Below, one piece after another: positions 20,640 to 62,699 of a DNA stretch of 64,000 nucleotides. The notes beneath the pieces are model-generated. The model was not told where the DNA came from. It was given only the letters and a program-made list of their open reading frames with translations, and made no database searches. Origin of the DNA: Macrostomum lignano (lineage: Eukaryota); NCBI GenBank assembly GCA_002269645.1, contig NIVC01000094.1:930001-994000 (forward strand). Reading direction: 5' to 3'. The position numbers and the translations under genes are program-made. Every line of letters starts with the position of its first letter. Position 1 is the stretch's first letter.

Positions 20640-22840
20640 AAAAGCAGCCTCCGTCACAACTCCGACACTTCATATTTCCGACACAATTTATATCTCCGAC
20701 ACTTCATATCTCCGACATTTCATATCTCCACACTTCATATCTCCACACTTCATATCTCCACACTTCATATCTCCGACATTTCATATCTCCGACACTTCAT
20801 ATCTCCGACATTTCATATCTCCACACTTCATATCTCCGACATTTCATATCTCCACACTTCATATCTCCACACTTCATATCTCCACACTTCATATCTCCGA
20901 CATTTCATATCTCCGACACTTCATATCTCCGACATTTCATATCTCCACACTTCATATCTCCACACTTCATATCTCCACACTTCATATCTCCGACATTTCA
21001 TATCTCCGACACTTCATATCTCCGACATTTCATATCTCCGACATTTCATATCTCCGACATTTCATATCTCCGAAACTTCATATCTCCACACTTCATATCT
21101 CCACACTTCATATCTCCACACTTCATATCTCCGACATTTCATATCTCCGACACTTCATATCTCCGACACTTCATATCTCCACACTTCATATCTCCACACT
21201 TCATATCTCCGACACTTATTTCCAACACTTCATATCTCCAACACTTCATATCTCCAACACTTCATATCTCCAACACTTCATATCTCCAACACTTCATATC
21301 TCCGACATTTCATATCTCCGACACTTCATATCTCCGACATTTCATATCTCCGACATTTCATATCTCCGACACTTCATATCTCCGACATTTCATATCTCCG
21401 ACATTTCATATCTCCGACACTTCATATCTCCGACATTTCATATCTCCGACACTTCATATCTCCGACATTTCATATCTCCGACACTTCATATCTCCGACAT
21501 TTCATATCTCCGACACTTCATATCTCCGACACTTCATATCTCCGACATTTCATATCTCCGACATTTCATATCTCCGACACTTCATATCTCCGACATTTCA
21601 TATCTCCGACATTTCATATCTCCGACACTTCATATCTCCGACACTTCATATCTCCGACATTTCATATCTCCGACACTTCATATCTCCGACATTTCATATC
21701 TCCGACATTTCATATCTCCGACACTTCATATCTCCGACATTTCATATCTCCGACACTTCATATCTCCGACACTTCATATCTCCGACATTTCATATCTCCG
21801 ACACTTCATATCTCCGACACTTCATATCTCCACACTTCATATCTCCGACATTTCATATCTCCGACATTTCATATCTCCGACACTTCATATCTCCGACATT
21901 TCATATCTCCGACACTTCATATCTCCGACATTTCATATCTCCGACACTTCATATCTCCGACATTTCATATCTCCGACACTTCATATCTCCGACACTTCAT
22001 ATCTCCGACATTTCATATCTCTGACATTTCATATCTCCGACACTTCATATCTCCGACATTTCATATCTCCGACACTTCATATCTCCGACACTTCATATCT
22101 CCACACTTCATATCTCCACACTTCATATCTCCGACACTTATTTCCAACACTTCATATCTCCAACACTTCATATCTCCAACACTTCATATCTCCAACACTT
22201 CATATCTCCAACACTTCATATCTCCGACATTTCATATCTCCGACACTTCATATCTCCGACATTTCATATCTCCGACATTTCATATCTCCGACACTTCATA
22301 TCTCCGACATTTCATATCTCCGACACTTCATATCTCCGACATTTCATATCTCCGACACTTCATATCTCCGACACTTCATATCTCCGACATTTCATATCTC
22401 CGACATTTCATATCTCCGACACTTCATATCTCCGACATTTCATATCTCCGACATTTCATATCTCCGACACTTCATATCTCCGACACTTCATATCTCCGAC
22501 ACTTCATATCTCCGACATTTCATATCTCCACACTTCATATCTCCGACATTTCATATCTCCGACATTTCATATCTCCGACATTTCATATCTCCACACTTCA
22601 TATCTCCGACATTTCATATCTCCGACATTTCATATCTCCGACACTTCATATCTCCGAAACTTCATATCTCCGACATTTCATATCTCCGACACTTCATATC
22701 TCCGACATTTCATATCTCCGACACTTCATATCTCCGAAACTTCATGTCTCCACACTTCATATCTCCGACACTTCATATCTCCGACATTTCATATCTCCGA
22801 CATTTCATATCTCCGACACTTCATATCTCCGACACTTCAA
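20640..22840. repeat. 2.2-kb 15/16-bp minisatellite (cacttcatatctccga)n
   Basis: More than 130 near-identical units; source of the 750-aa pseudo-ORFs. Confidence 0.98.
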
Positions 22841-38456: not shown

Positions 38457-39580
<1,124 letters not shown>

Positions 39581-42136: not shown

Positions 42137-42679
<543 letters not shown>

Positions 42680-43334
42680 TTAGGTAGATAGAGCATCCTG
42701 TAGCAGGAAGCTGTCTCTTTCAAAAGCAGCAAACAAGCACCGGAAATTCTGCAACAAGTCACGCTTCAGGCGGAGAATTACTCTCGTGAAAAGCAGAACC
42801 CGTTCAAACCAGCGGCTTGCCACATGAATAGCGGGACCCCCGCTGAGAGGCGCTGAGAACTGCTCATAGTTATGATTATTATTAATTCCCAATCTGCTTT
42901 GCCAGCTTTTTTCGAAAGTAATCACGTTTTGAGTCCCATTGCTAATACTCACTTGGCTAATAATTCTTGGTCATTCACACTTCATCAGTCAAACTAATAT
43001 ATAAGAATAATTTTATTCGAACCCGTTGGTTAGTGACTCAGTGAGACCCATACTCCATCATCAGGTGATTCACCTAGAGTCTCTGAGTAGCGCTGGGTAG
43101 GTAGGAGAGAGAGAGGACCCGTCAAAATTTTGAGCACGAGTCCGCCATGAAAGAGCAAAGACTCAAAATTGTGGTGGGGGCGAGGAGGATGGCAGCTGGG
43201 GAGTCAGAGAGTTGAGTTGGAGGTTAATTATTTCTTAATGCTGCTTCCTGACGTGCCGCATCCGGTGATGGAGGGCCTTCCACATCAGGTGGGAAGAGGA
43301 GGCGGCGCGTTTTGTTGCGATTCGGACAGTGCTT

Positions 43335-43886
43335 TTGACTTTTGACTTTTGACTTTTGACTTTTGACTGACTGACTGACTGACTGACTGACTGACTGACT
43401 GACTGACTGACTGACTGACTGACTGACTGACTGACTGACTGACTGACTGACTGACTGACTGACTGACTGACTGACTGACTGACTGACTGACTGACTGACT
43501 GACTGACTGACTGACTGACTGACTGACTGACTGACTGACTGACTGACTGACTGACTGACTGACTGACTGACTGACTGACTGACTGACTGACTGACTGACT
43601 GACTGACTGACTGACTGACTGACTGACTGACTGACTGACTGACTGACTGACTGACTGACTGACTGACTGACTGACTGACTGACTGACTGACTGACTGACT
43701 GACTGACTGACTGACTGACTGACTGACTGACTGACTGACTGACTGACTGACTGACTGACTGACTGACTGACTGACTGACTGACTGACTGACTGACTGACT
43801 GACTGACTGACTGACTGACTGACTGACTGACTGACTGACTGACTGACTGACTGACTGACTGACTGACTGACTGACTGACTGACTGA
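43335..43886. repeat. (ttttgac)4 grading into (GACT)n, ~520 bp
   Basis: Read directly. Confidence 0.98.
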
Positions 43887-44322: not shown

Positions 44323-47300
44323 TCAATAGCCAAACACCTGTGTCGTAGCAGAGGTGATGTCGCGCGAGCAGCTGTCAGCGACGGAGTCTGACGCCAGGCG
44401 GCCTCGGCAGGCCCGGCACTGAATGCTGGCCGCTGCAGCTGCCGCAGGTTCTGCTGGCACCGAGTCATCGACGCCGAGCTCCGCAGTCAGCGTGGGCGAT
44501 CGAGATCGTGGCAAAGGCTTTGCAACTGGCTGAGGCTGAGCAGTGAGCAGCGCTGGCGTCGGCTGCGGGCGGGACAGCTGGAACTCGACCAGGGACCAAG
44601 ACTGCAGAGCAGACAGCACCAGCTGGAGAGCGAATTGAGAGTGCACTGCGGGACGGCGAGGGCGAGGGAGTGGAGGGGGCTCAGGAAACATGGGAGTAGT
44701 TAATGGCTTATGAGACATTCAACGAGAACTTTAAGGATACTTCAGGAAAATTATGGAAAACATGGGAATGTAAATCACAACTGAGGCATTGCATGCATCT
44801 CAACATGTATTGGAGACAGGATTGTGTGGCAATAAAATGGGGATCAGTGATCTATTTGGGGAATAAAACAGTGATCGATTTGGGGAATAAAACTGTAATC
44901 TACTTGGGGATTAAAACGGGGATCAATGATCTACTAAGGGAATAAAACGAGGATCAATGATCTACTAAGGGAATAAAACGAGGATCAATGATCAACTAGG
45001 GGAATAAAAGGAGGATCAATGATCTACTAAGGGAATAAAAAGGGGATCAATGATCAACTAGGGGAATAAAAGGAGGATCAATGATCTACTAAGGGAATAA
45101 AAAGGGGATCAATGATCTACTAAGGGAATAAAACGAGGATCAATGATCTACTAAGGGAATAAAACGGGGATCAATGATCTACTAGGGGAATAAAACGGGG
45201 ATCAATGATCTACTAAGGGAATAAAAGGAGGGATCAGGGAGAGAATACTTTAGCAGATGGGGACCCCCAGGCTCATGCCACAGACCACTCCAAACTGGCC
45301 GCAAATTATGCCACACAAGGAGACAATGGGCAGGTGAGAGAGCGGACTCAACAGCCACTCACCAGCGATCTCAGCGGCATTGGCGCCATCAGCCTTCCAG
45401 AAGTCGGCGACGTAAGCGGCGCTGTGCAGCCCCATCTGGGCGAGGCTGGCGCCGGCCAGCGGAACGAACTTGGCGCCAAGCCGGTAGCCGGGAAGCAGCG
45501 GCGGCCGGCGGCAGCAGCGGGCGACGAGGGCGACTGCGGCGAGGCTGCCGGCCAGGCGGGAGGCAGCGGCGAGGCCGCGCAGCCAGACGAGCCAGCCCTC
45601 CAGCGGGGGCTGCCAGGGCGGCTGCGGATCCGACCGGAGCTGCTGAGGCGGCCGGGCGCCGCCGTTGTCCAGCAGGATGGCAGCCGACACCGCCAGGTTG
45701 CAGCAGTGGAACAGCTGGCCCTGGCGCACCAGAGCCCGCGCCGTCAGCAGCTGGAATCTGGCAGGGGTGGCGCATCTTGCCCTGGGGGAGACTGGAAGCT
45801 AACTGGGGATGGTGGGGATGGTGGGGATGGTGGGGATGATGGGATGGCGGGGATGGTGGGGATGATGGGGATGATGGGGATGGTGGGGATGGTGGGGATG
45901 ATGGGGATGGTGGGGATGGTGGGGATGATGGGGATGATGGGGATGATGGGGATGATGGGGATGGTGGGGATGATGGGGATGGCGGGGATGGTGGGGATGG
46001 TGGGGATGATGGGGATGATGGGGATGGCGGGGATGGTGGGGATGGTGGGGATGGTGGGGATGGTGGGGATGATGGGGATGGTGGGGATGATGGGGATGGC
46101 GGGGATGGTGGGGATGATGGGGATGATGGGGATGGTGGGGATGGTGGGGATGGTGGGGATGGTGGGGATGGCGGGGATGATGGGGATGATGGGGATGGTG
46201 GGGATGGTGGGGATGAACAGTGAAAGAATAATAGAGAGTAAGCAGGGAGCGAGTGGGATAATGGGAGGGGGAGGAATAATTGGAGGGAGGGTCGGGATAA
46301 TGGGAGGGAGGAGTTGGGATAATGGGCAGGGAGGGGTTGGGATATTGGGCAGGGAGGGGTTGGGATATTGGGCAGGGAGGGGTTGGGATATTGGGCAGGG
46401 AGGGGTTGGGATATTGGGCAGGGAGGGGTTGGGATATTGGGCAGGGAGGAGTTGGGATAATGGGCAGGGAGGGGTTGGGATATTGGGCAGGGAGGGGTTG
46501 GGATAGTGGGCAGGGAGGGGTTGGGATAGTGGGGCAGGGAGGGGTTGGGATAATGGGAGGGAGGGGTTGGGATAGTGGGCAGGGAGGGGTTGGGATAATG
46601 GGAGGGAGGGGTTGGGATAGTGGGCAGGGAGGGGTTGGGATAATGGGAGGGAGGGGTTGGGATAGTGGGCAGGGAGGGGTTGGGATAGTGGGCAGGGAGG
46701 GGTTGGGATAGTGGGCAGGGAGGAGTTGGGATAGTGGGCAGGGAGGGGTTGGGATAGTGGGCAGGGAGGGGTTGGGATAGTGGGGCAGGGAGGGGTTGGG
46801 ATAATGGGAGGGAGGGGTTGGGATAGTGGGCAGGGAGGGGTTGGGATAGTGGGGCAGGGAGGGGTTGGGATAATGGGAGGGAGGGGTTGGGATAGTGGGC
46901 AGGGAGGGGTTGGGATAATGGGAGGGAGGGGTTGGGATAGTGGGCAGGGAGGGGTTGGGATAATGGGAGGGAGGGGTTGGGATAGTGGGCAGGGAGGGGT
47001 TGGGATAATGGGAGGGAGGGGTTGGGATAGTGGGCAGGGAGGGGTTAGGATAGTGGGGCAGGGAGGGGTTGGGATAGTGGGGCAGGGAGGGGTTGGGATA
47101 GTGGGCAGGGAGGAGTTAGGATAGTGGGCAGGGAGGGGTTGGGATAGTGGGCAGGGAGGAGTTAGGATAGTGGGCAGGGAGGGGTTGGGATAATGGGAGG
47201 GAGGGGTTGGGATAGTGGGCAGGGAGGGGTTGGGATAGTGGGCAGGGAGGAGTTAGGATAGTGGGCAGGGAGGGGTTGGGATAGTGGGCAGGGAGTGAGT

Positions 47301-48792: not shown

Positions 48793-50707
48793 TGCATTGA
48801 TTTTAGGCTTTGGTGGATTGAAGGCGCAGTTCTACTCAGAAGTGAGAACTCATTAATTAACTTAAATATTTCCACCCTGGACTATCAATTATCTGCTGAA
48901 CTATCGGCTATTTTAATTGCTTTTAATCGTGGTCCGGTTGATTTAGCCTGGGCGTGCCTAGGCGTCTGGCTCAGAAGATTGGGGTGGTTGTAGCCGATGT
49001 ACATAGCCAGAGCCAATGTACATTAAATCTCTAACCCTCCCCCGCATGTACAAAGGACGGGCCACTTTCTCTTTTACTACTTTACCAGGAGTCTTTACCC
49101 CAAACCGTTCACCCGTGCACAATCAAATTAGGCAACGTTTCACGCGCAATGTTCAAGGCCATGCAAATTGGTGTACAAGTTGGATGTTTAGTCCACAGAG
49201 CCACAGAAAGTTCTGCGGTTTAGCCTTCATTGATTATAGTGAACGAGAACCGAGTGCAAACGAAAAATGAATACAGTAAGCATAATATTCTATTTGATTT
49301 TGTTTGCGAGCTACATACGGGGCTTAGAACTAATTTATGATTTAAACAAAACATTCTGAAGTTTTTTGTTTCTTCACAACATTAAGTTTTTTTGTTTTGT
49401 TTCTGAACATTCTGAAGATACCGGATTTTTCATCGTTTTTTGATATTTCATAAACGGGAAATTGTATAGTAATTGTTTTTTATATGTTATACATTTCCAT
49501 ATACTAATGCAATGGTTTGCATAGGTGCTTGCAACTTATGCAAACCAGCTTTAGTGACCAGCCACCCCCTGCCTTTGTGCATCTGTTTAGGGCATGCTGT
49601 ACTTAGCCCCACCCCCTCCGCTGGCTATTTAGCACGCCGTTTCAGCGTTGCGCTCAGTGTTCTCGCTGCTATAATTTTTTCTAAATTTTTCTAAATAAGT
49701 TGTTATAAAAGCGAAAGACGCGAAAATAAAACATTTTTAATATGCGTCCTGACTTGTAACGACTACAGCTTTTCAAATTATTAATTTTAATTACTAACTG
49801 ATTTGTTACACTTTCCTAGAATTTTTTATAAACGACTATATTTCAGCATCAACCATGATGAATACTTATCAGGATGCCATGAAGAAGATGATATATTACT
49901 AAATCATCATTGACATTGGAGAGGGACGCCCGCCCATTGCTCTTGATATGGTTCCCACGAAAAATTATTCAAACTGGAATGAACAAAAAATTTTATTTAG
50001 TCAAATAAGTCTTTTTTAAATAAATATATGAAAACGTACGTGCTCAAGCATCCACTGGGAGCTCTTATTCCAAAATTTATTCGGAACACTCATTCTAAAG
50101 CCATTAATTGTTTTGTTGGAAGAAAAGTTTGCTATTTTGTTTGCTAGATGGCCTAGGTTAATAATGCGACATGCTGTCGGATTACAAAAGTGAGCCTTTA
50201 GCAGCGAATATTGTTATTTCTCACGGAAAGTCCGCATTAAAAACTGCAATTAACATAAATGAAAAACAGAGATCTATAAATAGTATTCCGAAATCTGAGT
50301 GCGTATGCAATAAATTCATTTGCAGAGACAGGTGTACAAATTAATATTTTTTCTGGTAAACTCGGGCTTTTGTCATAGTTTCAGCAGGCCACTAGTCGGA
50401 GTTGTCTTCATCTCTTTCGGCGAATATTTACACTGAAAATAGTTGTCAAAAACACTCCCCAGTGACTAAAGTGCTGCAAAACAATGCATAAAGTTTAAAG
50501 CGGTGTTTACGCCGCGTGAGAGCAGCCACCAGCAGTGCAGAGGCGACTCGAAGCAAGAAAAAACTGTTGCCTTCATTTAGCCAGCCAGCCTCAACCCCTC
50601 TGTTTTCGAATGAGAGCTCGTATATTGTCTCTGCTTACACTCAGCCGCCCATAAAAACAAGCTTCATCTCAGAGTGAATTATTTAGACAACCGACAATTT
50701 AGCGCTC

Positions 50708-53392
50708 ATGCGGCCGTGGGTACTAATCCTGCCATTACTGCTTCAACTCGCCCGCGTCAGGGCCCAGTGCAACCCGGCCAGCTCCGTGCCCGACCCTCGA
50801 GTTGGCGTCGTTGACTACCCGGGCACGGCTGGCGACAGCTGCTACTTTCCCTTCACCTACGGCGGCAGGGTGTTCCACGAGTGCGACGGGCCTTACTGTG
50901 ACGGCTCCTTCTGCGGCTACTGGTGCGCCACCAGCTGCAACTACCCCACCGACTACTCGGCCTGGCGCTTCTGCCGCTTTATGGTGGCCGACCTGGCCAA
51001 GCCGAACTGCGCCGCTCTGGCCAACATGAGCTCCTCGACCGAGATTGAAGTCTACGGCGGCAGCGGCTCTGGCACAGCCTGCTACTTTCCGTTCATGCAC
51101 GACAATGTCTGCTACGATGACTGCATTGATACTGACGGCAGCGGCCAGTTTTGGTGCTCAACCACGGATGTCATGTACCACGTAGCTACCAACAAGCGCT
51201 TCTGTCGTGCCACCAGGAAGGGCCTGAGGGATTCTAGCTGTTCCAGACTTAACGCTACCGCCCCCGTGTACCTTCCACAGCAGATTGGCAACTACTCAAT
51301 AGCTCTGGTGCAAACGGATCCTACAGGTAACTGCACCTTCCCTTTCTACTACAAAGAGAAATGCTACGATGACTGCACGACGGTGGATGCTCAAGCTTGG
51401 GACCTGCCCTGGTGCTTAACCGAGAAATACTACCAGCCCAACAAGCGAACGAGGGTCTGCCCGCACTATCGCAAGTATAAGGAGGTCACCGGCCTCGCAC
51501 TTGACTGGGGATTCTTCTACATCCGAGAGCACACCAGCTGCAGCTCCGGTGGCGCCGCTTGCAACTCGTCCTGGTCTCCCGCAGGTTCCGCTGTGCCAAC
51601 CACATCAGCTGGATCAAAACGGATGGCGCTGCAGTCGTCAGCTGAGCCAATTGAGGTCATGCCTCAGCCAAATGGCCTCTTCATCTTAAAGTTGCCATTG
51701 AGTTGCACCGACTCCAACTGGAGAAGCTTAAGCATCGATGGCAGCGAGGTCGGCCTGGAGCCGATTTCGAACGAGCGCGAGTTCTGGGACCTCCGTCCCA
51801 CTGGCACGCCAGGTGCGTTCACAGTGCAGTCGATGCGAAACAGCACGCGCGGAATGTATCTGTCTCACAGCTCGCTGAGCGGTACTCCGGTTTTAAGCCT
51901 GTCGGCTACCAGCGCCACCCAGTGGCGATTCGAAGCGCTTTCAGGACTGTCTAAGGCCACGCTGGGTCTGCCGTGCGAGAATCCGACCCGGCTGAACGGA
52001 TCTTGGTGTGCCTGGAGTGAGTACTTTGTGTCCGGGAGCGTTTCGACCAGAAATCGAACGTGCGCCTGCCCGCCAGCAATTCGCGGCCTGCCATGCGATG
52101 GGAACAGTACGGAGGTTGCCTCTGTGGTCAACGGCAGCTGGTGCGGTTGGTCCGCTTGGACCGAGATCAGCGATGGCTACAACACGAGATCTCGATTGTG
52201 CAACTGTAGCGCGCCGAAAAATGGCGGTGCAGACTGTCCAGGCGCGGGCAACGAGACTGGCCTGCGAGTGAACGGGTCGTGGTGCGATTGGTCCGCGTTC
52301 ACTGTCGACCCTGACGGCTGGGGATTTAGGAGTCGTTACTGCAACTGCAGCGCGCCGCAGTACGGAGGTTTGGACTGCGTCGGACCAAGCAACGATACAG
52401 GAGTGGCTGTCAACGGCAGCTGGTGTGCCTGGTCTTCATTCTCTCCCGCAGATAGCTCTGGACTGAGCTCCCGAACCCGAGTTTGTAACTGCAGCGCTTC
52501 GCAGTACGGAGGCTCAGAGTGCGTTGGAGCCAGTAACGAGACCGGGCCTCAAGTAAACGGGTCCTGGTGCAACTGGTCGCCATTCAATGTTACACACGGT
52601 CAAGGAACTCGAAGAAGATCTTGCAACTGCAGAGCGCCACAGTTCGGAGGTGCTGCTTGTCCAGGAAGCAGTATCGAGACAGGCCCCGCAGTCAATGGCA
52701 CTTGGTGCAGCTGGTCGCCTTTCACTGTGAGTGGCTCTCTAGGCGTCAGAACGCGAGCCTGCAACTGCAGTGCGCCGCAGTTTGGCGGCTCGAATTGCTC
52801 CGGACTAGGCAGAGAAGAGGGACCGGCCGTGAACGGCACCTGGTGTGCATGGTCGGCCTATTCAAGTAACGGAACTCATGAAACTCGACGACGAGTCTGC
52901 AACTGCAGCGCGCCGCAGTTCGGCGGATCTGACTGTCCGGGCAGAGGCGTCGAGGCGAGCAGCATCGTTTCCGGCGGCTGGTGCAGCTGGTCAGCCTGGT
53001 CTGTCTCTGGCACCGGCCGGAGCAGCAGAAATCGATCATGCGCCTGTCCCTCAGCCAGTAGGCTGGGCGCCGGATGCAGCGGGCCGGACACTGAAACTGA
53101 AAGCGGCGGTGGCGGCGGCAGCAGCGGACGGGCGCATCCAGCCGAGCCGGGCGAGCCAGGCGCGGCCTTTAACAGCCTGGACTCATACTCCCGCCTCGTG
53201 GCCTGGTCAGCGGTCATCTGCCTGGCCATGCTGACCAGCACACTGACCGGCCTGGGCCTCATGCTCAACCGGATTGTCCAGTCCAGACGCTCTGTTGGCT
53301 CCAGCACCGAGGCGTCCCAGCAGATCAGACCGAAACGGCCGACACCACCGATATTCTCTGACTACGGATCTCACAGTGCCTACCCGGGATGA
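50708..53392 (+). CDS. Intronless 894-aa type I membrane protein: signal peptide, 3 fibronectin type II domains, beta-trefoil-like segment, 8 TSP1-like repeats, TM helix, short tail
   Basis: Single non-repetitive ORF. Signal MRPWVLILPLLLQLARVRA. FN2 motifs CYFPFTYGG..WCAT, CYFPFMHDN..WCST, CTFPFYYKE..WCLT. Eight NG(S/T)WCxWS..RxRxCxC..GG..C units. TM LVAWSAVICLAMLTSTLTGLGLML. The beta-trefoil call is tentative. Confidence 0.9.
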   Translation: MRPWVLILPLLLQLARVRAQCNPASSVPDPRVGVVDYPGTAGDSCYFPFTYGGRVFHECDGPYCDGSFCGYWCATSCNYPTDYSAWRFCRFMVADLAKPNCAALANMSSSTEIEVYGGSGSGTACYFPFMHDNVCYDDCIDTDGSGQFWCSTTDVMYHVATNKRFCRATRKGLRDSSCSRLNATAPVYLPQQIGNYSIALVQTDPTGNCTFPFYYKEKCYDDCTTVDAQAWDLPWCLTEKYYQPNKRTRVCPHYRKYKEVTGLALDWGFFYIREHTSCSSGGAACNSSWSPAGSAVPTTSAGSKRMALQSSAEPIEVMPQPNGLFILKLPLSCTDSNWRSLSIDGSEVGLEPISNEREFWDLRPTGTPGAFTVQSMRNSTRGMYLSHSSLSGTPVLSLSATSATQWRFEALSGLSKATLGLPCENPTRLNGSWCAWSEYFVSGSVSTRNRTCACPPAIRGLPCDGNSTEVASVVNGSWCGWSAWTEISDGYNTRSRLCNCSAPKNGGADCPGAGNETGLRVNGSWCDWSAFTVDPDGWGFRSRYCNCSAPQYGGLDCVGPSNDTGVAVNGSWCAWSSFSPADSSGLSSRTRVCNCSASQYGGSECVGASNETGPQVNGSWCNWSPFNVTHGQGTRRRSCNCRAPQFGGAACPGSSIETGPAVNGTWCSWSPFTVSGSLGVRTRACNCSAPQFGGSNCSGLGREEGPAVNGTWCAWSAYSSNGTHETRRRVCNCSAPQFGGSDCPGRGVEASSIVSGGWCSWSAWSVSGTGRSSRNRSCACPSASRLGAGCSGPDTETESGGGGGSSGRAHPAEPGEPGAAFNSLDSYSRLVAWSAVICLAMLTSTLTGLGLMLNRIVQSRRSVGSSTEASQQIRPKRPTPPIFSDYGSHSAYPG

Positions 53393-53824
53393 CCTTTCCG
53401 GGACTAGCTTAGTCTAGCTATACTCGTAGATACTTTGGCCTCAGTTGAGCAAGCTGCGATCGTGCTCACTCCTGCAATTCATCTTTCATTGACACTTCGC
53501 ACTCTCCCTAAATATACATAAGATTTATAACCTGACAGCATCGAGCTGCCTAATTTATTCTTTGCCATATTACTGAAACACTCAAATTTAGTATATTAGA
53601 CTAGCCATCTAGTGCCCCCCTTCCGAGGCGCTCAATAAGCAAGGAGCAAAAATTATTCATGCAAATCCATTAAAAAAGCACATTTTCTTAAGAGCTTATT
53701 CCTTCTTCAGTTTTATAAATCACCTTATTTGAGTAAAATTGTCATGAAAAAAGATGCTTACCATGAATATCTTGCTTCTAAAAGTAACAAAGGGACGCAA
53801 CAAAATAAAGCCCTCAAGAAGATA

Positions 53825-54584: not shown

Positions 54585-57500
54585 TCAGGGAGCCGGCTTG
54601 GCTGACTGCTGCCGCCGCCGCCTCTCCAACCGCTGCTGCACCAGGTCATCCGCCAGCAGCAGCAGCCCCGCGAATCCGATCAGAGCCGACAGGAAGATGA
54701 TGGAGGCGTTCCAGGAGCCGGTCCGGTCGAACAAATCGCCTGGAGAGGAATTTCAAGTATCAATTCGAGGGTTCGCGGCGATAAAAGCGTTCGGCACTGG
54801 TTAGTGAGGCTGGCTTTGGCGCTCTGGGCCAGCCTGAATGGAATTAAATACTTCTAGTGCGAGCTGAGGGTCTGCTTGCCAGTCTGCTTGTACTGAATAT
54901 TCTGCTGTGTGTACCCCAATAACCTCACAATGCCTCTCTAGTCCATAGTACTCCAATCCAAATTCACGTATCTTCATTGCTTCCCCAATTTCCATCTATC
55001 CCATCCCATCCTATCTCATCCTATTCAATCCCATCCCATCCCATCCCAACCTATCCCATCTCATCCCATGTCATCCCCATCCCATTCCATCTCACCCCAT
55101 CCCATCCCATCCCATCCTATCCTATCCCATCCCATCCCATCCCATCCCATCCCATCCCATCCTATCCTATCCCATCCCATCCCATCCCATCCCATCCCAT
55201 CCCATCCAACTCCATCCTATCATATCCTCTCATATCCCATCCGATCCCCATCCCCAGCAGCAGTAACGCACCCAGCAGCACGGGCACGATCAGCATGATT
55301 ATGCTCTCGATGATGCCCAGCATCCCGTAGGTCAAGCCCAGGTTCTCAATCCCGAACGTCTCCACCAGCATTGGCGCCAGGTTGGGAACCAGGCCGCCAG
55401 CCAGTAGGCCCTCCAGCAGAGCGTAGGCCAGGGCAGCGGCCGGTGTCGGGTGCAACAGGAGGCACCAGAGCGCACCCTGGGCGATCGTGAGGGTCAGCAG
55501 CAGCAGCTGCCGCCTGAACAGCTGCCTGTCAGCCAGGAAGCCGATGCTAATCCGAGTGACGAGGTCTGTGATGCCCTGGTACTGCAGCAGCCGGGTGTAC
55601 TCAGTGGCCGTCATGCCGATGTTCTTGCCGTGCTGCGGCAGCACCATGAAGTTGAACGGCATCGCCTGCGCGGCCAGCGACAGGCTGAACAGCAGCACCC
55701 AGAAGCGGGGCCGGCGCATCAGGCGGCCGCTCTCTTTGAAGCTCCGGCGGAGTCGGGTGACGAAGTTTCCCTGAAAGACGTCTTCCGGGGTATTCGCTGG
55801 GCCGCCGCCGGAGTCAAACAAGACGCTGACGTCTCCACAGGACGCCAGGAAGATCGCCGGGGCGTGCGGGGCCGGGGCGCCGCGGGACGCATCTTCCGCT
55901 GCCTCTGCGGACGTGGCGTTCGTCGAGGTAGCTCGACGTCGACAGCTGCGCCCGGCTGCGGACTTGGCCGAGCCGGACACAAAAAGAATGTTATCGGCGC
56001 TGGTGCAGTAGTGGTGCGGGTCACCGTTGGTTTGTTGCTTGGCTTTGCTCTTGGAGGTGCAGCTTGCACAAGCCTCTGGCTGGCTCTTGCTATCGTTGTC
56101 CATTTCACTTTCTACATCCTTTTCCGTGCTCTGCTTTTTAGTCTTCATTGCGTTTTCTTCCACCACCTCTTCAGCATTCTTCTCCGCATTCTTCTCTGCA
56201 TTCTTCTCCGCATTCTTCTCCGCATTCTTCTCTGCATTCTTCTCTGCACTCTTCTCCGCATTCTTCTCCGCATTCTTCTTCGCATTCTTCTTCGCATTCT
56301 TATTCGCATTCTTCTCCGCATTCTTCTCTGCACTCTTCTCCGCATTCTTCTCTGCACTCTTCTCCGCATTCTTCTCTGCACTCTTCTCCGCATTCTTCTC
56401 CGCATTCTCAGCCTCTTCGCCGATCAGCGCCTCCGCCTCAGGGGCAGCTCCCTGGTCGCTGGCGGGCACAAACGGGCGCATGACAGCGGCAGCCACGGCC
56501 ACGTTGAGCATGATTGCGCCCCAGATCAGCATGCAGCCGCGGAAGGTGTACTGCTCAATTAGATAGTTCATCAACGGCGGCATGCACAGAGCGCCCATGG
56601 AGCAGCCGGAGAACGTGATGCCCATAGCGACCGTCCGGCGCTGCAGAAAGTAGTAGCTGATGATCAGCACAGTCGGCGGGTGCGTCATGGACAGCCCGAT
56701 GCCCACCAGCAGCCCGATGGTGAAGTACAGCACCTCCAGCGATTCGGCAAAGTAGGACAGGGAGAAACCTAAGCCGAGGAAGCAGCTGCCGATGGACACG
56801 ACCAGACGGACTGAGAAGCGCCTGGCCAGGGCCATTGTGACTGGCGCTGGGCGGGTTCGTGGAGGAAGACGGATTAGTGGAGAATCATAGGGTTAAACTG
56901 GAGCTCATCTGCTCATCTTCTGACTTACTAAGAATGAGAAACACCAGAAACATGAAGCTCAAAATCCATGAGGTGTCCCGCTTGCTCCTGTTGTAGTGCT
57001 CCGACACGCTGGCCAGCAGCAGGCCGGTGCTTCGGACATTGCCGATCACCAGGATGTGCAGGAATGACCCAGCTGAAATGTGCATTCGGTCACCTGCTCG
57101 CTTAACTGGCAGTCTGACACTCACTGACTGACAGGCTGGCACAACCTGACACTCACTGACTGACAGGCTGGCACAACCTGACACTCACTGACTGACAAGT
57201 TGGCACAACCTGACACTCACTGACTGACAAGCTGGCACAACCTGACACTCACTGGCTGACAAGCTGACACAACTTGACACTCTCTGACTGACAAGCTGGC
57301 ACAACCTGACACTCACTGACTGACAAGCTGGCACAACCTGACACTCACTGACTGACAAGCTGACACAACCTGACACTCACTGACTGACAAGCTGGCACAA
57401 CCTGACACTCACTGACTGACAAGCTGGCACAACCTGACACTCACTGGCTGACAAGCTGACACAACTTGACACTCTCTGACTGACAAGCTGGCACAACCTG

Positions 57501-59870: not shown

Positions 59871-60029
59871 AGAGCCAGGAATTTTGAGCAACGAGTATGT
59901 AGAAAGAAAAATTCAAAGACTACTACTTAACAGAATAAGTACTATATGTAGCGCTTTTATCGCATTTTACTCGTATAGTGGCTCCCTTAAAATTGGCATG
60001 ACGCTTACTTTTACGTTTGAAATTGTGTA

Positions 60030-62330
60030 TCTTTTATGTTTGACATGGTGGCTCTTTTATGTTCTACATGGTGGCTCTTTAATGTTCTACATGGTGGCTC
60101 TTTGATGTTTGATTCGGAGTTTTTTAATGTCTGACATGGTGTCACTTTAATGTTTGACATTGTGGCTCTTTTATGTTTGACATGGTGGCTCTTAGTGTTT
60201 GACATGGTGGCTCTATAATGTTAGACATGGTGGCTCCATAATGTTAGACATGGTGGCTCTTTAATGTTCGACATGGTGGCTCTTTAATGTTAGACATGTT
60301 GGCTATTAAATTTTTGACATGGTGGCTCTTTAATGTTCGACATAGTGGTCCTTTTATGCTTGAAATGGTGGCTCTTTAATATTTGACATGGTGGCTCTTT
60401 TATGTTTGGCATGATGGCTCTTTGATGTTTGATATAGAGTCACGAATATACTTGACATGGTGACTCGTTAATGTTAGACATGGTGGCTCTTTAATGTTTG
60501 ACATGGTGGCTCTTTAATGTTCGACATGGTATATCTATAATGTTAGACATGGTGGCTTTTTAATGTTCGACATGGTGCCTCTTTAATATTTGACATGGTG
60601 GTCCTTTTATGTTCTACACGGTGGCTCTTTTATGTTTGACATGATGGCTCTTTAATGTTTTACATGGAGTCACATATATGTTGGACATGGTGGCTCTTTA
60701 ATGTTCGACATGGTGGATCTATAATGTTTGACATGGTGGCTTTTTAATGTTCGACATGGTGGCTCTTTAATGTTAGACATGGTGGCTCTTTAATGTTTGA
60801 CATGGTGGCTCTTTAATTTTTGACATGGTAGCTCTTTTATGTTTGACATGATGGCTCTTTTATGTTTGACATGATGGCCCTTTTATGTTCTTCATGGTGA
60901 CTCTTTTATGTTAGACATGGAGTCACGAATATACTTGACATGGTGACTCGTTAATGTTAGACATGGTGGCTCTTTAATGTTTGAAGTGGTGGCTCTTTAA
61001 TATTTGACATGGTGGCTCTTTAATGTTTGACATGGTGGCTCTTTAATGTTCGACATGGTGCCTCTTTAATGTTTGACATGGTGGTCCTTTTATGTTTGAC
61101 ATGGTGGCTCTTTAATATTAGACATGGTGGCTCTTTAATGTTAGACATGGTAGCTCTTTAATGTTCGACATGGTGGCTCTTTAATGTTAGACATGGTGGT
61201 TCTTTAATGTTCGACATGGTGGCTCTTTAATGTTAGACATGGTGGTTCTTTAATGTTCGACATGGTGGCTCTGTAATGTTTGACGTTGTGGCTCTTTAAT
61301 GTTTGACATGGTGGCTCTATATTGTTCGACATGGTGGTTCTTTATGTTCGACATGGTGGCTCTTTTATGCTTGACATGGTGGCTCTTTACTTTTTGACAT
61401 GGAGTCACATATATGTTTGACATGGTGGCTCTTTAATGTTTGACATGGTGGCTCTTTTATGTTTGACATGATGGCTCTTTTATGTTTGACATGGTGGCTC
61501 TTTAATGTTCGACATGGTGGCTCTTTAGTGTTTGACATGGTGGCTCTTTAAGGTTTAACATGGATTCACGAATATACTTGACATGGTGACTCGTTAATGT
61601 TAGACATGGTGGCACCCTAGTGTAATGAATGCTCTTTAATGTTTGAAATGGTGGCTCTATATTGTTCGACATGGTGGTTCTTTATGTTCGACATGGTGGC
61701 TCTTTTATGCTTGACATGGTGGCTCTTTACTTTTTGACATGGAGTCACATATATGTTTGACATGGTGGCTTTTTAATGTCAGACATGGTGGCTCTTTAAT
61801 GTTCGACATGGTGGTACTTTTATGCTTGACATGGTGGCTCTATAATGTTCGACATGGTGGTTCTTTTATGTTCGACATGGTGGCTCTTTTATGCTTGACA
61901 TGGTCGCTCTTTACTTTTTGACATGGAGTCACATATATGTTTGACATGGTGGCTCTTTTATGTTGGACATGGTGGCTCTTTTATGTTGGACATGGTGGCT
62001 CTTTAGTGTTTGACATGGTGGCTCTTTTATGTTTGACATGGATTCACGAATATACTTGACATGGTGACTCGATAATGTTAGACATGGTGGCTCTTTAATG
62101 TTTGACCTGGTGGCACCCTAGTGTAATGATGGCTCTTTAATGTTTGAAATGGTGGCTCTTTAATATTTGACATGGTGGCTCTTTAATGTTCGACATGGTG
62201 GCTCTATAATGTTAGACATGGTGGCTCTTTAATGTTCGACATGGTGGCTCTTTAATGTTAGACATGGTGGCTCTTTAATGTTAGACATGGTGGATCTTTT
62301 ATGTTTGACATGATGGCTCTTTAATGTTTT
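60030..62330. repeat. 2.3-kb 23-bp minisatellite (acatggtggctctttaatgtttg)n
   Basis: About 100 units; rare variants such as ggagtcacgaatatacttg recur. Confidence 0.97.
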
Positions 62331-62699
62331 ACATTGTGCTTTTTGTTTTTAGCATTTAAAATGTTTTTATTAGGGTTTTTTTAATAAAAAAATCTTTTTG
62401 CACTACTAAGCTTTGAACCCAGGTCGCTACATAAGCAGTCCAATCTGTTTGCATCGAGGCTTTCTCTTTTCAATTGGCGAACATGATTTGTGGCCCTTAT
62501 AATTCAATGCTTACAGCAAGTTGGTTAGAGTAAAAAGTTATGACATAATCAATTTCTTAGTCAGCCAGTATCAGTGTCAATTTAAGTTAGCAATATTGTT
62601 ACGCAATTTCAATCAAGTTGTGTGTGCATTTCTTTGGCACTGTTTTCAACTTGTTGTGATGCAATCTTTATCAGAATTGAAATTCAGTCAGTCAGTTTT

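What the first reader, a model, noticed from the sequence alone, without database searches (positions are those of the whole stretch)
50708..53392. Intronless receptor with an unfamiliar FN2x3 - beta-trefoil-like - TSP1x8 - TM architecture
Seen: one 2.7-kb exon, whereas every other host gene here has multiple introns, and the modular protein described above with many N-x-S/T sequons. Established: FN2 domains bind collagen/gelatin and are mostly known from vertebrate proteins; the mannose-receptor family has ricin then FN2 then C-type lectins, a different order. Inference: a lineage-specific adhesion/scavenger or immune receptor created by domain shuffling and retroposition. I know no named protein with this layout.
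Basis: partly seen in the sequence, partly recalled or inferred. Interest (0 to 1): 0.75.

Follow-up and report, generated by a model that had tools for sequence, protein, structure and literature searches.

The report
Flatworm-specific FN2–thrombospondin-repeat membrane glycoprotein
This is a real single-exon gene of the flatworm Macrostomum lignano that encodes a heavily glycosylated cell-surface protein built from known matrix-binding modules in a combination found, so far, only in this species; it is a curiosity of domain shuffling and does not represent a new kind of system.

Summary
The ORF at 50708-53392 (+) is real and encodes 894 aa. Its layout is signal peptide, three fibronectin type II (FN2) modules, a ~170-aa region with no detectable relatives, eight thrombospondin type 1 repeats (TSRs), one transmembrane helix and a short tail. 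It has 28 N-glycosylation sequons, against 8 expected by chance. The window comes from Macrostomum lignano (assembly Mlig_3_7). Three near-identical copies exist, and pN/pS of 0.22 with no indels indicates a constrained coding gene. The annotation is derived from transcripts.

A 45-51% identical paralog has the same layout with 10 TSRs and one 140-nt intron. No protein with this layout, or with the middle region, turned up outside M. lignano in 1.8-5.8 billion sequences.

The TSRs are a reduced 4-cysteine variant. The "beta-trefoil" call could not be confirmed: Pfam, PDB sequence search, AlphaFold (pLDDT 46 and 28) and Foldseek all gave nothing usable. Retroposition has no support. The cytoplasmic tail is not conserved, which argues against a signalling receptor.

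The best reading is a lineage-specific membrane-anchored adhesion or capture protein that binds matrix, probably collagen. This is a new arrangement of known modules, of modest interest.

The parts
50708..50767 (+). Signal peptide (aa 1-20, MRPWVLILPLLLQLARVRAQ)
   Evidence: Hydrophobic N-terminus directly after the first ATG, with an in-frame stop 8 codons upstream. The cleavage site is inferred, not predicted by a tool.
50768..50974 (+). FN2 module 1 (aa 21-89). The canonical Cys are 45/59/73/89, with extra Cys at 21, 64, 69 and 77.
   Evidence: Pfam fn2. PDB hits to fibronectin, MMP-2 and MMP-9 FN2. All Cys are invariant in the paralog.
51008..51205 (+). FN2 module 2 (aa 101-166). The canonical Cys are 125/139/150/166, with extra Cys at 101 and 135.
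51239..51460 (+). FN2 module 3 (aa 178-251). The canonical Cys are 209/223/236/251, with extra Cys at 178 and 219. This is the segment best conserved with the paralog (68% identity).
   Evidence: Best Pfam fn2 stretch, aa 209-251. MMP-9 alignment. Per-segment identity.
51461..51973 (+). Orphan middle region (aa 252-422). It is predicted to be all-beta and is 48% identical to the paralog. Its fold is unresolved.
   Evidence: No Pfam family. An exhaustive search of 1.84e9 proteins found only M. lignano proteins. No PDB sequence hit. AlphaFold gave pLDDT 46 and Foldseek gave nothing.
51974..53110 (+). Array of eight reduced-cysteine thrombospondin type 1 repeats (aa 423-801; W-C-x-W-S starts at aa 433, 478, 525, 572, 620, 666, 712 and 758)
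53111..53194 (+). Gly/Pro-rich juxtamembrane linker (aa 802-829)
   Evidence: Read from the translation. 39% identity to the paralog.
53195..53269 (+). Transmembrane helix (aa 830-854)
   Evidence: Kyte-Doolittle maximum of 1.98 at aa 835-853. It is the only long helix (827-859) in the full-length model. It is followed by RIVQSRR, which fits the positive-inside rule.
53270..53392 (+). Cytoplasmic tail (aa 855-894) plus the stop codon; not conserved
   Evidence: Truncated after aa 870 by CAG>TAG in the L004 copy. The paralog's tail is about 10 aa and unrelated.

Best explanation
This is a native, expressed, single-exon gene of the flatworm Macrostomum lignano that encodes a type I membrane glycoprotein.

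Shown: a signal peptide; three FN2 modules, each carrying an extra conserved cysteine pair; a ~170-aa beta-rich region with no detectable relatives; eight tandem thrombospondin type 1 repeats of a reduced 4-cysteine kind, each with about three conserved N-glycosylation sequons; one transmembrane helix; and a short, non-conserved tail.

Inferred mechanism: the glycosylated TSR array acts as a long, semi-rigid stalk of roughly 35-40 nm, assuming about 5 nm per repeat as in solved TSRs. The stalk holds the FN2 head and the orphan domain away from the cell surface. The FN2 head binds collagen or denatured collagen, or a similar matrix ligand, as FN2 modules do in gelatinases, fibronectin and the mannose receptor family. 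Because the tail is dispensable and unconserved, the protein most likely works as a passive anchor, adhesion or ligand-capture molecule and not as a signalling receptor.

Origin: lineage-specific domain shuffling, followed by in-exon tandem duplication of TSR units. It has one 45-51% identical paralog (10 TSRs, one intron) and three near-identical copies, which may derive from the species' recent genome duplication.
For: Anatomy.
Organism and copies. The source is assembly GCA_002269645.1, contigs NIVC01000094.1, NIVC01002808.1 and NIVC01002590.1.
Functional constraint: the L004 copy differs at 35 of 2685 nt with no indels, 18 synonymous against 13 non-synonymous codon changes and pN/pS 0.22, while the flanks are 93-98% identical with 14-61 gap positions per stretch.
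Native composition: CDS GC 0.60 and GC3 0.68, against 0.60 for the neighbouring MFS exon.
Transcription: the GenBank gene models of this assembly come only from a transcriptome assembly (PMC5730564), and the gene carries such a model.
Lineage restriction.
Tail not conserved.
FN2-3 is the most conserved segment, at 68%, as expected if the head carries the function.
TSR number changes by in-exon duplication: a 279-nt array of 2.5 copies in the paralog.
FN2 collagen binding is established knowledge (cited in PMC6211748).
Against: No binding, localisation or expression-pattern data were found. No usable 3D model was obtained, so the stalk geometry and the pairing of the new cysteines are inferences. 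FN2 modules can also bind other ligands, for example phosphorylcholine in seminal plasma proteins, so collagen is only the default guess. The terminal Trp of the W-x-x-C motif is missing in FN2-2 and FN2-3. The unknown middle domain might carry the real ligand specificity.
Confidence: 0.55

Rival explanations
1. It is an endocytic scavenger or pattern-recognition (immune) receptor. The FN2 modules, a lectin-like middle domain and the TSRs capture microbial or debris ligands, and the receptor then internalises or signals.
For: It is a multi-module extracellular protein with a TM anchor. TSRs and FN2 occur in scavenger and complement proteins (PDB hits to properdin, C6-C8 and the mannose-receptor-type FN2 literature). 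The family is lineage-specific and varies in copy number and repeat number, as many invertebrate immune genes do.
Against: No conserved cytoplasmic motif exists. The tail is truncated in one copy and reduced to about 10 unrelated residues in the paralog. No lectin family was detected in the middle region. pN/pS of 0.22 shows purifying selection, not diversifying selection.
Confidence: 0.2
2. The gene is a retrocopy: a processed mRNA of an intron-containing parent was reinserted, which would explain the single exon.
For: There are no CDS introns, against a genome mean of 4.9 per gene. The paralog has one intron.
Against: There is no poly(A) tract downstream; the only A-run is 8 nt, 1 kb away. 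Only chance-level 11-12-nt direct repeats flank the gene. The paralog is only 45-51% identical and is itself one long exon plus a 140-nt intron that sits inside a TSR unit, so intron poverty predates the split. The flanks are collinear between genome-duplicate copies. Loss or gain of a single intron is the simpler account.
Confidence: 0.1
3. The membrane form is a precursor. The ectodomain is shed at the Gly/Pro-rich juxtamembrane linker and acts as a soluble or matrix-deposited glycoprotein, for example a component of basement membrane or mucus.
For: A flexible 28-aa G/P-rich linker lies before the TM helix. The tail is dispensable. The ectodomain is heavily glycosylated and repetitive.
Against: No recognisable protease site was identified. 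The TM segment is retained in all copies and in the paralog.
Confidence: 0.12
4. It is an annotation or assembly artefact, or a pseudogene.
For: The genome is very repeat-rich, and gene models in older assemblies are fused or misnamed.
Against: The ORF is an intact 894 codons. Three independent contigs carry it. There are no indels, and pN/pS is 0.22. The domains and all cysteines are conserved with the paralog.
Confidence: 0.03

Closest known systems
THSD7A / THSD7B / THSD1 (vertebrate type I membrane proteins made mostly of TSRs)
   Same: Signal peptide, a long tandem TSR ectodomain, a single TM helix, a short tail and heavy N-glycosylation. Probably the best analogue for how this protein works.
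   Different: They have no FN2 modules and no orphan domain. Their TSRs have the canonical cysteine framework. No sequence orthology was detected.
Collagen-binding domain of gelatinases MMP-2 / MMP-9 and the fibronectin gelatin-binding region
   Same: Three tandem FN2 modules; these are the best FN2 sequence matches in the PDB.
   Different: There is no metalloprotease or FN1 context here. Each FN2 here has an extra conserved Cys pair and an N-terminal extension of about 24-31 aa.
Mannose receptor family (MRC1, MRC2/Endo180, PLA2R1, DEC-205)
   Same: Type I membrane proteins that combine an FN2 module with a beta-trefoil (CysR) domain; their FN2 binds collagen.
   Different: Their order is CysR, FN2, then 8-10 C-type lectin domains. 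Here no C-type lectin domain is present, TSRs take the place of the stalk, the order is FN2 then the unknown domain, and the trefoil identity is unproven.
BSP / ELSPBP1-type tandem-FN2 secreted proteins (including a bryozoan 5xFN2 protein, P0009)
   Same: Tandem FN2 arrays; P0009 is the only non-Macrostomum hit to the N-terminal half (27% identity).
   Different: They are secreted and have only 4-Cys FN2 modules, with no TSRs and no TM helix.
Apicomplexan TRAP/MIC2-type adhesins
   Same: An adhesive head, then TSRs, a TM helix and a short tail, acting as a surface adhesin.
   Different: The lineage is unrelated, the head is a vWA domain, and the tail has a conserved acidic/Trp motif that is absent here. 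This is a resemblance recalled from knowledge and was not tested.

Membership tests
Fibronectin type II domain (PF00040) | Profile match above the curated cut-off | tested here: met
   39.4 bits against 22.2, in 3 stretches. The paralog scores 42.8 bits.
Fibronectin type II domain (PF00040) | Four-cysteine framework C-x-F-P-F ... C ... W-C ... C | tested here: met
   C45/59/73/89, C125/139/150/166 and C209/223/236/251, each with the (Y/T)FPF and WC motifs. Extra conserved Cys are a lineage-specific addition.
Fibronectin type II domain (PF00040) | Collagen/gelatin binding | not testable with these tools
   Needs a binding assay.
Thrombospondin type 1 repeat (PF00090) | Profile match above the curated cut-off, or a significant match to solved TSRs | tested here: met
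   25.5 bits against 21.6. The unit profile hits thrombospondin-1 TSR2/3 at E 1.7e-18, and also UNC5, C6-C8, properdin and ADAMTS13.
Thrombospondin type 1 repeat (PF00090) | W-x-x-W and R-x-R layer motifs | tested here: met
   All 8 units have W-C-x-W and R-x-R-x-C.
Thrombospondin type 1 repeat (PF00090) | Six-cysteine framework with the CSxTCG hairpin (the POFUT2 O-fucosylation site) | tested here: not met
   There are four Cys per unit. A 5-residue deletion removes C1 and C2, C5 and C6 are absent, and new Cys appear after the first Trp and two residues after C3. No C-x-x-S/T-C-x-x-G motif is present. These repeats are therefore a variant subclass, not canonical group-1 TSRs.
Ricin-type / other beta-trefoil domain (middle region) | Profile or structure match to a beta-trefoil family | tested here: not met
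   Pfam gave none at E<=10. The PDB profile search gave 0 hits at E<=10. The best Foldseek hit had E 0.33 and TM<=0.25, on a model with pLDDT 46.
Ricin-type / other beta-trefoil domain (middle region) | Internal pseudo-threefold repeat | tested here: inconclusive
   The best self-alignment score was 26, against 26.2 +/- 3.9 in shuffles. By eye there are two ~45-aa stretches ending in F-W-D-L and Q-W-R-F, which is suggestive only.
Mannose receptor family | CysR, FN2, multiple C-type lectin domains, TM helix and endocytic tail motif | tested here: not met
   No Lectin_C hit was found, the order differs, and the tail is not conserved.
Processed retrogene | Intronless copy with a poly(A) remnant, target-site duplication and an intron-rich parent | tested here: not met
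   The CDS is intronless, but there is no poly(A) remnant or target-site duplication, and the only paralog has a single 140-nt intron.

The most novel reading that the evidence does not exclude
The ~170-aa middle region is a new extracellular ligand-binding fold, and the W-C-x-W ... C-x-C repeats are a previously undescribed TSR subclass with a re-wired disulfide. Together they would define a Macrostomum-specific surface adhesion family with a role peculiar to this interstitial flatworm, such as attachment to substrate or matrix, or capture of microbes or food.
Probability: 0.15. Interest if true: 0.5.

Novelty: new variant of a known kind. Interest (0 to 1): 0.3.

Why it matters
If the reading is right, this is a clean example of how a flatworm lineage assembled a new cell-surface adhesion or capture protein from old metazoan matrix modules (FN2, TSR) plus one orphan domain. 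It then expanded the protein by in-exon repeat duplication instead of classical exon shuffling. The reduced 4-cysteine TSR lacks the POFUT2 site yet keeps the Trp/Arg ladder, which would interest people who study TSR folding and glycosylation. M. lignano is transgenic- and RNAi-tractable, so function is testable. The finding does not open or settle any long-standing question, because lineage-specific shuffling of extracellular modules is common in animals.

Tried and rejected
(1) AlphaFold2 of aa 252-428 with a 3-sequence alignment gave pLDDT 46 and pTM 0.44, which is unusable. Foldseek against the PDB on that model returned only meaningless hits with E>=0.33.

(2) AlphaFold2 of the full length gave pLDDT 27.7, and even the FN2 and TSR parts were unfolded. 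The low confidence therefore reflects the shallow alignment, not disorder.

(3) The exhaustive phmmer search of the middle region returned two extra hits, P0003 and P0004. These are bacterial repeat proteins whose scores add up over S/T/G-rich repeats. Pairwise E values of 0.016 and 5 led me to reject them as spurious.

(4) The middle-region profile found nothing against PDB sequences.

(5) The sub-repeat alignment A3 was uninformative, because MAFFT aligned the overlaps I had included.

(6) The internal-repeat test was not significant.

(7) I looked for expression data under the gene IDs Mlig014498 and Mlig009063 in full text and in three papers' supplements and found none.

(8) My first literature search was polluted by 'fibronectin type III' matches.

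(9) The UniRef name 'Protein-tyrosine-phosphatase' for the paralog cluster is rejected. No phosphatase domain is present, and the name probably comes from a fused older gene model.

(10) The 4-Cys TSR profile search of 5.8e9 proteins found only three short canonical TSR fragments.

(11) An Rfam scan of the window found nothing.
Full report
**1.

A single ORF of 894 codons runs from the ATG at 50708 to the stop at 53390-53392 on the + strand. An in-frame stop lies 8 codons upstream of the ATG, and a hydrophobic signal-peptide-like sequence follows the ATG directly. The N-terminus is therefore complete.

Pfam reports fn2 (PF00040) in three stretches at 39.4 bits against a cut-off of 22.2, and TSP_1 (PF00090) at 25.5 bits against 21.6. 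phmmer against PDB sequences gives thrombospondin-1 TSRs (E 3e-10) and the FN2 modules of MMP-9, MMP-2 and fibronectin (E 2.5e-9 to 1e-6).

A regular expression and an alignment find eight units of 45-48 aa starting at residues 433, 478, 525, 572, 620, 666, 712 and 758. Their mean pairwise identity is 49%. One hydrophobic segment lies at about aa 830-854 and is followed by RIVQSRR, giving a type I topology. There are 28 N-x-S/T sequons, against 8.1 +/- 2.5 in 1000 shuffles with a maximum of 17. Most sequons sit at three conserved positions in each TSR unit: N-G-S/T before the first Trp, C-N-C-S, and N-E/D-T.

**2. Source and reality of the gene**

The exact protein is encoded on two contigs of Macrostomum lignano assembly GCA_002269645.1. 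The window corresponds to NIVC01000094.1:930001-994000, and the NIVC01002808.1 copy differs by one synonymous base. A third copy on NIVC01002590.1 (P0001, locus tag BOX15_Mlig014498g1) differs at 35 of 2685 nt with no indels. That is 18 synonymous and 13 non-synonymous codon changes, pS 0.029, pN 0.0065 and a ratio of 0.22. The flanks are 93-98% identical with 14-61 gap positions per aligned stretch. This pattern fits a constrained coding gene.

CDS GC (0.60, GC3 0.68) equals that of the neighbouring MFS transporter exon (0.60), against 0.37-0.38 in the flanks. The gene is therefore compositionally native.

The GenBank annotation of this assembly was made solely from a genome-guided transcriptome. 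Novel assembled transcripts below RPKM 0.5 that did not overlap the earlier transcriptome mappings were discarded, and transcripts overlapping repeats were removed. The assembly has a mean of 4.9 introns per gene (PMC5730564). The existence of the gene model is therefore indirect evidence of transcription, and a 2.7-kb intronless CDS is unusual but not extraordinary. The two flanking annotated genes are multi-exon, with 402 aa over 4.5 kb and 601 aa over 3.5 kb.

**3. The modules in detail**

*FN2.* Each module has the canonical four cysteines and the FPF and WC motifs. Each also has an extra Cys in place of the usual aromatic residue before C2 (C135, C219), paired in number by a Cys 24-31 residues upstream (C101, C178). 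Module 1 has four extra Cys (21, 64, 69, 77). All are invariant in the paralog. A bryozoan 5xFN2 protein, the only non-Macrostomum hit to the N-terminal half, has plain 4-Cys modules.

*TSRs.* A profile of 14 units from both paralogs hits thrombospondin-1 TSR2/3 at E 1.7e-18, then UNC5, C6-C8, BAI1 (vasculostatin-120), ADAMTS13 and properdin. The printed alignment shows four features:

- a 5-residue deletion that removes the CSxTC hairpin (C1, C2);
- loss of C5 and C6;
- retention of C3 (R-x-R-x-C) and C4 (G-G-x-x-C);
- two new invariant Cys, one right after the first Trp and one two residues after C3.

The POFUT2 consensus is absent, while W-x-x-W (the C-mannosylation motif) and R-x-R are present in all eight units. 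That the two new Cys pair with each other is my inference. A search of 5.8e9 proteins with this profile found only three short canonical TSR fragments.

*Middle region (aa 252-422).* No Pfam family matched at E<=10. An exhaustive phmmer search of 1.84e9 representatives found only the M. lignano proteins, plus two bacterial repeat proteins that are spurious on pairwise inspection. The profile search of PDB sequences gave 0 hits at E<=10. AlphaFold2 gave pLDDT 46 and an all-beta prediction, and Foldseek found nothing better than E 0.33 with TM<=0.25. The test for an internal repeat was not significant.

By eye, two ~45-aa stretches (N-G-x-F-x-L ... G-x-x-V ... F-W-D-L and Q-W-R-F) resemble ricin-type trefoil subdomains. 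This is a lead, not a result. The full-length model was useless at pLDDT 27.7. It failed even on the FN2 and TSR parts, so the low confidence reflects the 3-sequence alignment.

**4. Family and gene structure**

One paralog cluster exists (P0002, P0005 and P0006; BOX15_Mlig009063). It is 45% identical in the search and 51% in the alignment, and has the same layout.

Its gene on NIVC01002830.1 is one long exon, a canonical GTGAGC...TTTTGCAG phase-2 intron of 140 nt (L003 8667-8806) and a last exon. The intron sits inside TSR unit 9, within the T-R-T-R (R-x-R) stretch. Spliced, the gene gives an open 982-codon frame with 10 TSR units. It carries a recent 279-nt duplication of two TSR units, 2.5 copies at 87%. 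The gene in the window has no DNA-level tandem repeat.

The family was therefore already intron-poor before the paralogs split, and TSR number changes by in-exon duplication. Retroposition hallmarks are absent: there is no poly(A) remnant, and only chance-level 11-12-nt flanking repeats.

Identity to the paralog by segment:

| Segment | Identity to paralog |
|---|---|
| FN2-3 | 68% |
| TSR array | 53% |
| FN2-1 | 50% |
| FN2-2 | 48% |
| Middle region | 48% |
| TM helix | 40% |
| Tail | essentially unalignable (3 of 8 aligned residues) |

**5. Mechanism**

Shown: this is a secreted-pathway, single-pass membrane protein with an FN2 x3 head, an orphan domain and a TSR x8 array, many conserved sequons, purifying selection on the ectodomain, and a dispensable tail. 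The tail is 40 aa here. In the L004 copy, CAG>TAG at codon 871 leaves 16 aa, and in the paralog the tail is about 10 unrelated residues.

Inferred: the TSR array is a glycosylated stalk that presents the FN2 head and orphan domain for binding collagen-like matrix or another extracellular ligand. The protein would then act as an anchor, adhesion or capture molecule and not as a signalling receptor. FN2 collagen binding is established for gelatinases and the mannose receptor (references cited in PMC6211748).

Rival explanations are an endocytic or immune receptor, a shed matrix glycoprotein, a retrocopy origin and an artefact. They are weighed in the Rival explanations section.

**6. Comparison with known proteins**

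In how it works, the protein is closest to THSD7A/THSD1-type TSR membrane proteins, with a gelatinase-like triple-FN2 head. It is not a member of the mannose receptor family, because it has no C-type lectin domains, a different module order and an unproven trefoil.

FN2 is not vertebrate-restricted. It is described as ubiquitous in vertebrate and invertebrate extracellular proteins, and several planarian proteins carry it (PMC6211748). I found no protein with FN2 + TSR + TM, or with the middle region, outside M. lignano. The databases probably lack other Macrostomum proteomes, so 'species-specific' really means 'not seen outside the genus so far'.

**7. Verdict**

This is a new arrangement of known modules with a variant TSR and one orphan domain, restricted to a flatworm lineage. 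It is a new variant of a known kind, with interest of about 0.3.

Noticed in passing
window 1-64000, e.g. 20660-22839, 38457-39579, 42137-42692, 43364-43886, 46263-47295, 60008-62338: The window is packed with long micro- and minisatellite arrays. Examples are a 16-bp unit x138, TCTA x281, TAGA x139, TGAC x131, a 23-bp unit x45 and a 23-bp unit x102. They account for the strong local GC-skew swings and for most of the long 'ORFs' elsewhere in the window.
   Followed up: partly
window 55162-56835 (- strand), repeat at 56174-56408: The downstream neighbour is a Major Facilitator Superfamily transporter (MFS_1, E 1.5e-27). Its central loop contains about 20 copies of an (N/S)AEK-type tetrapeptide, encoded by a 12-bp tandem repeat inside the coding exon.
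   Followed up: partly
L004 (NIVC01002590.1) codon 871 of the gene; equivalent to window 53318-53320: A 98.7%-identical genomic copy has CAG>TAG, which removes the last 24 residues of the cytoplasmic tail. The rest of that copy is intact.
   Followed up: yes
L003 6001-6171 and the protein cluster of P0002: Database models of the paralog are inconsistent. The NCBI model starts 57 codons upstream of the signal-peptide Met and has 946 aa, against 982 aa when I splice the single intron. UniRef members of the same 90% cluster are named 'Protein-tyrosine-phosphatase' (969 aa) and 'C2H2-type domain-containing protein' (2735 aa). These names probably come from fused gene models of an older assembly, since no such domain is in the 969-aa sequence.
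   Followed up: partly
window 49960-49971 and 53648-53659: A 12-nt exact direct repeat (AAAAATTATTCA) lies 748 nt upstream of the ATG and 256 nt downstream of the stop. It is AT-rich, about one such match is expected by chance, and it is not next to any poly(A) tract.
   Followed up: yes
window 51491-51580 (aa 262-291): In a BLASTP alignment with a bryozoan FN2 protein, the start of the middle region (LALDWGFFYIREHTSC...C.SSW) lines up with an FN2 module but lacks the first cysteine. This may be a degenerate fourth FN2 remnant or may be chance.
   Followed up: no
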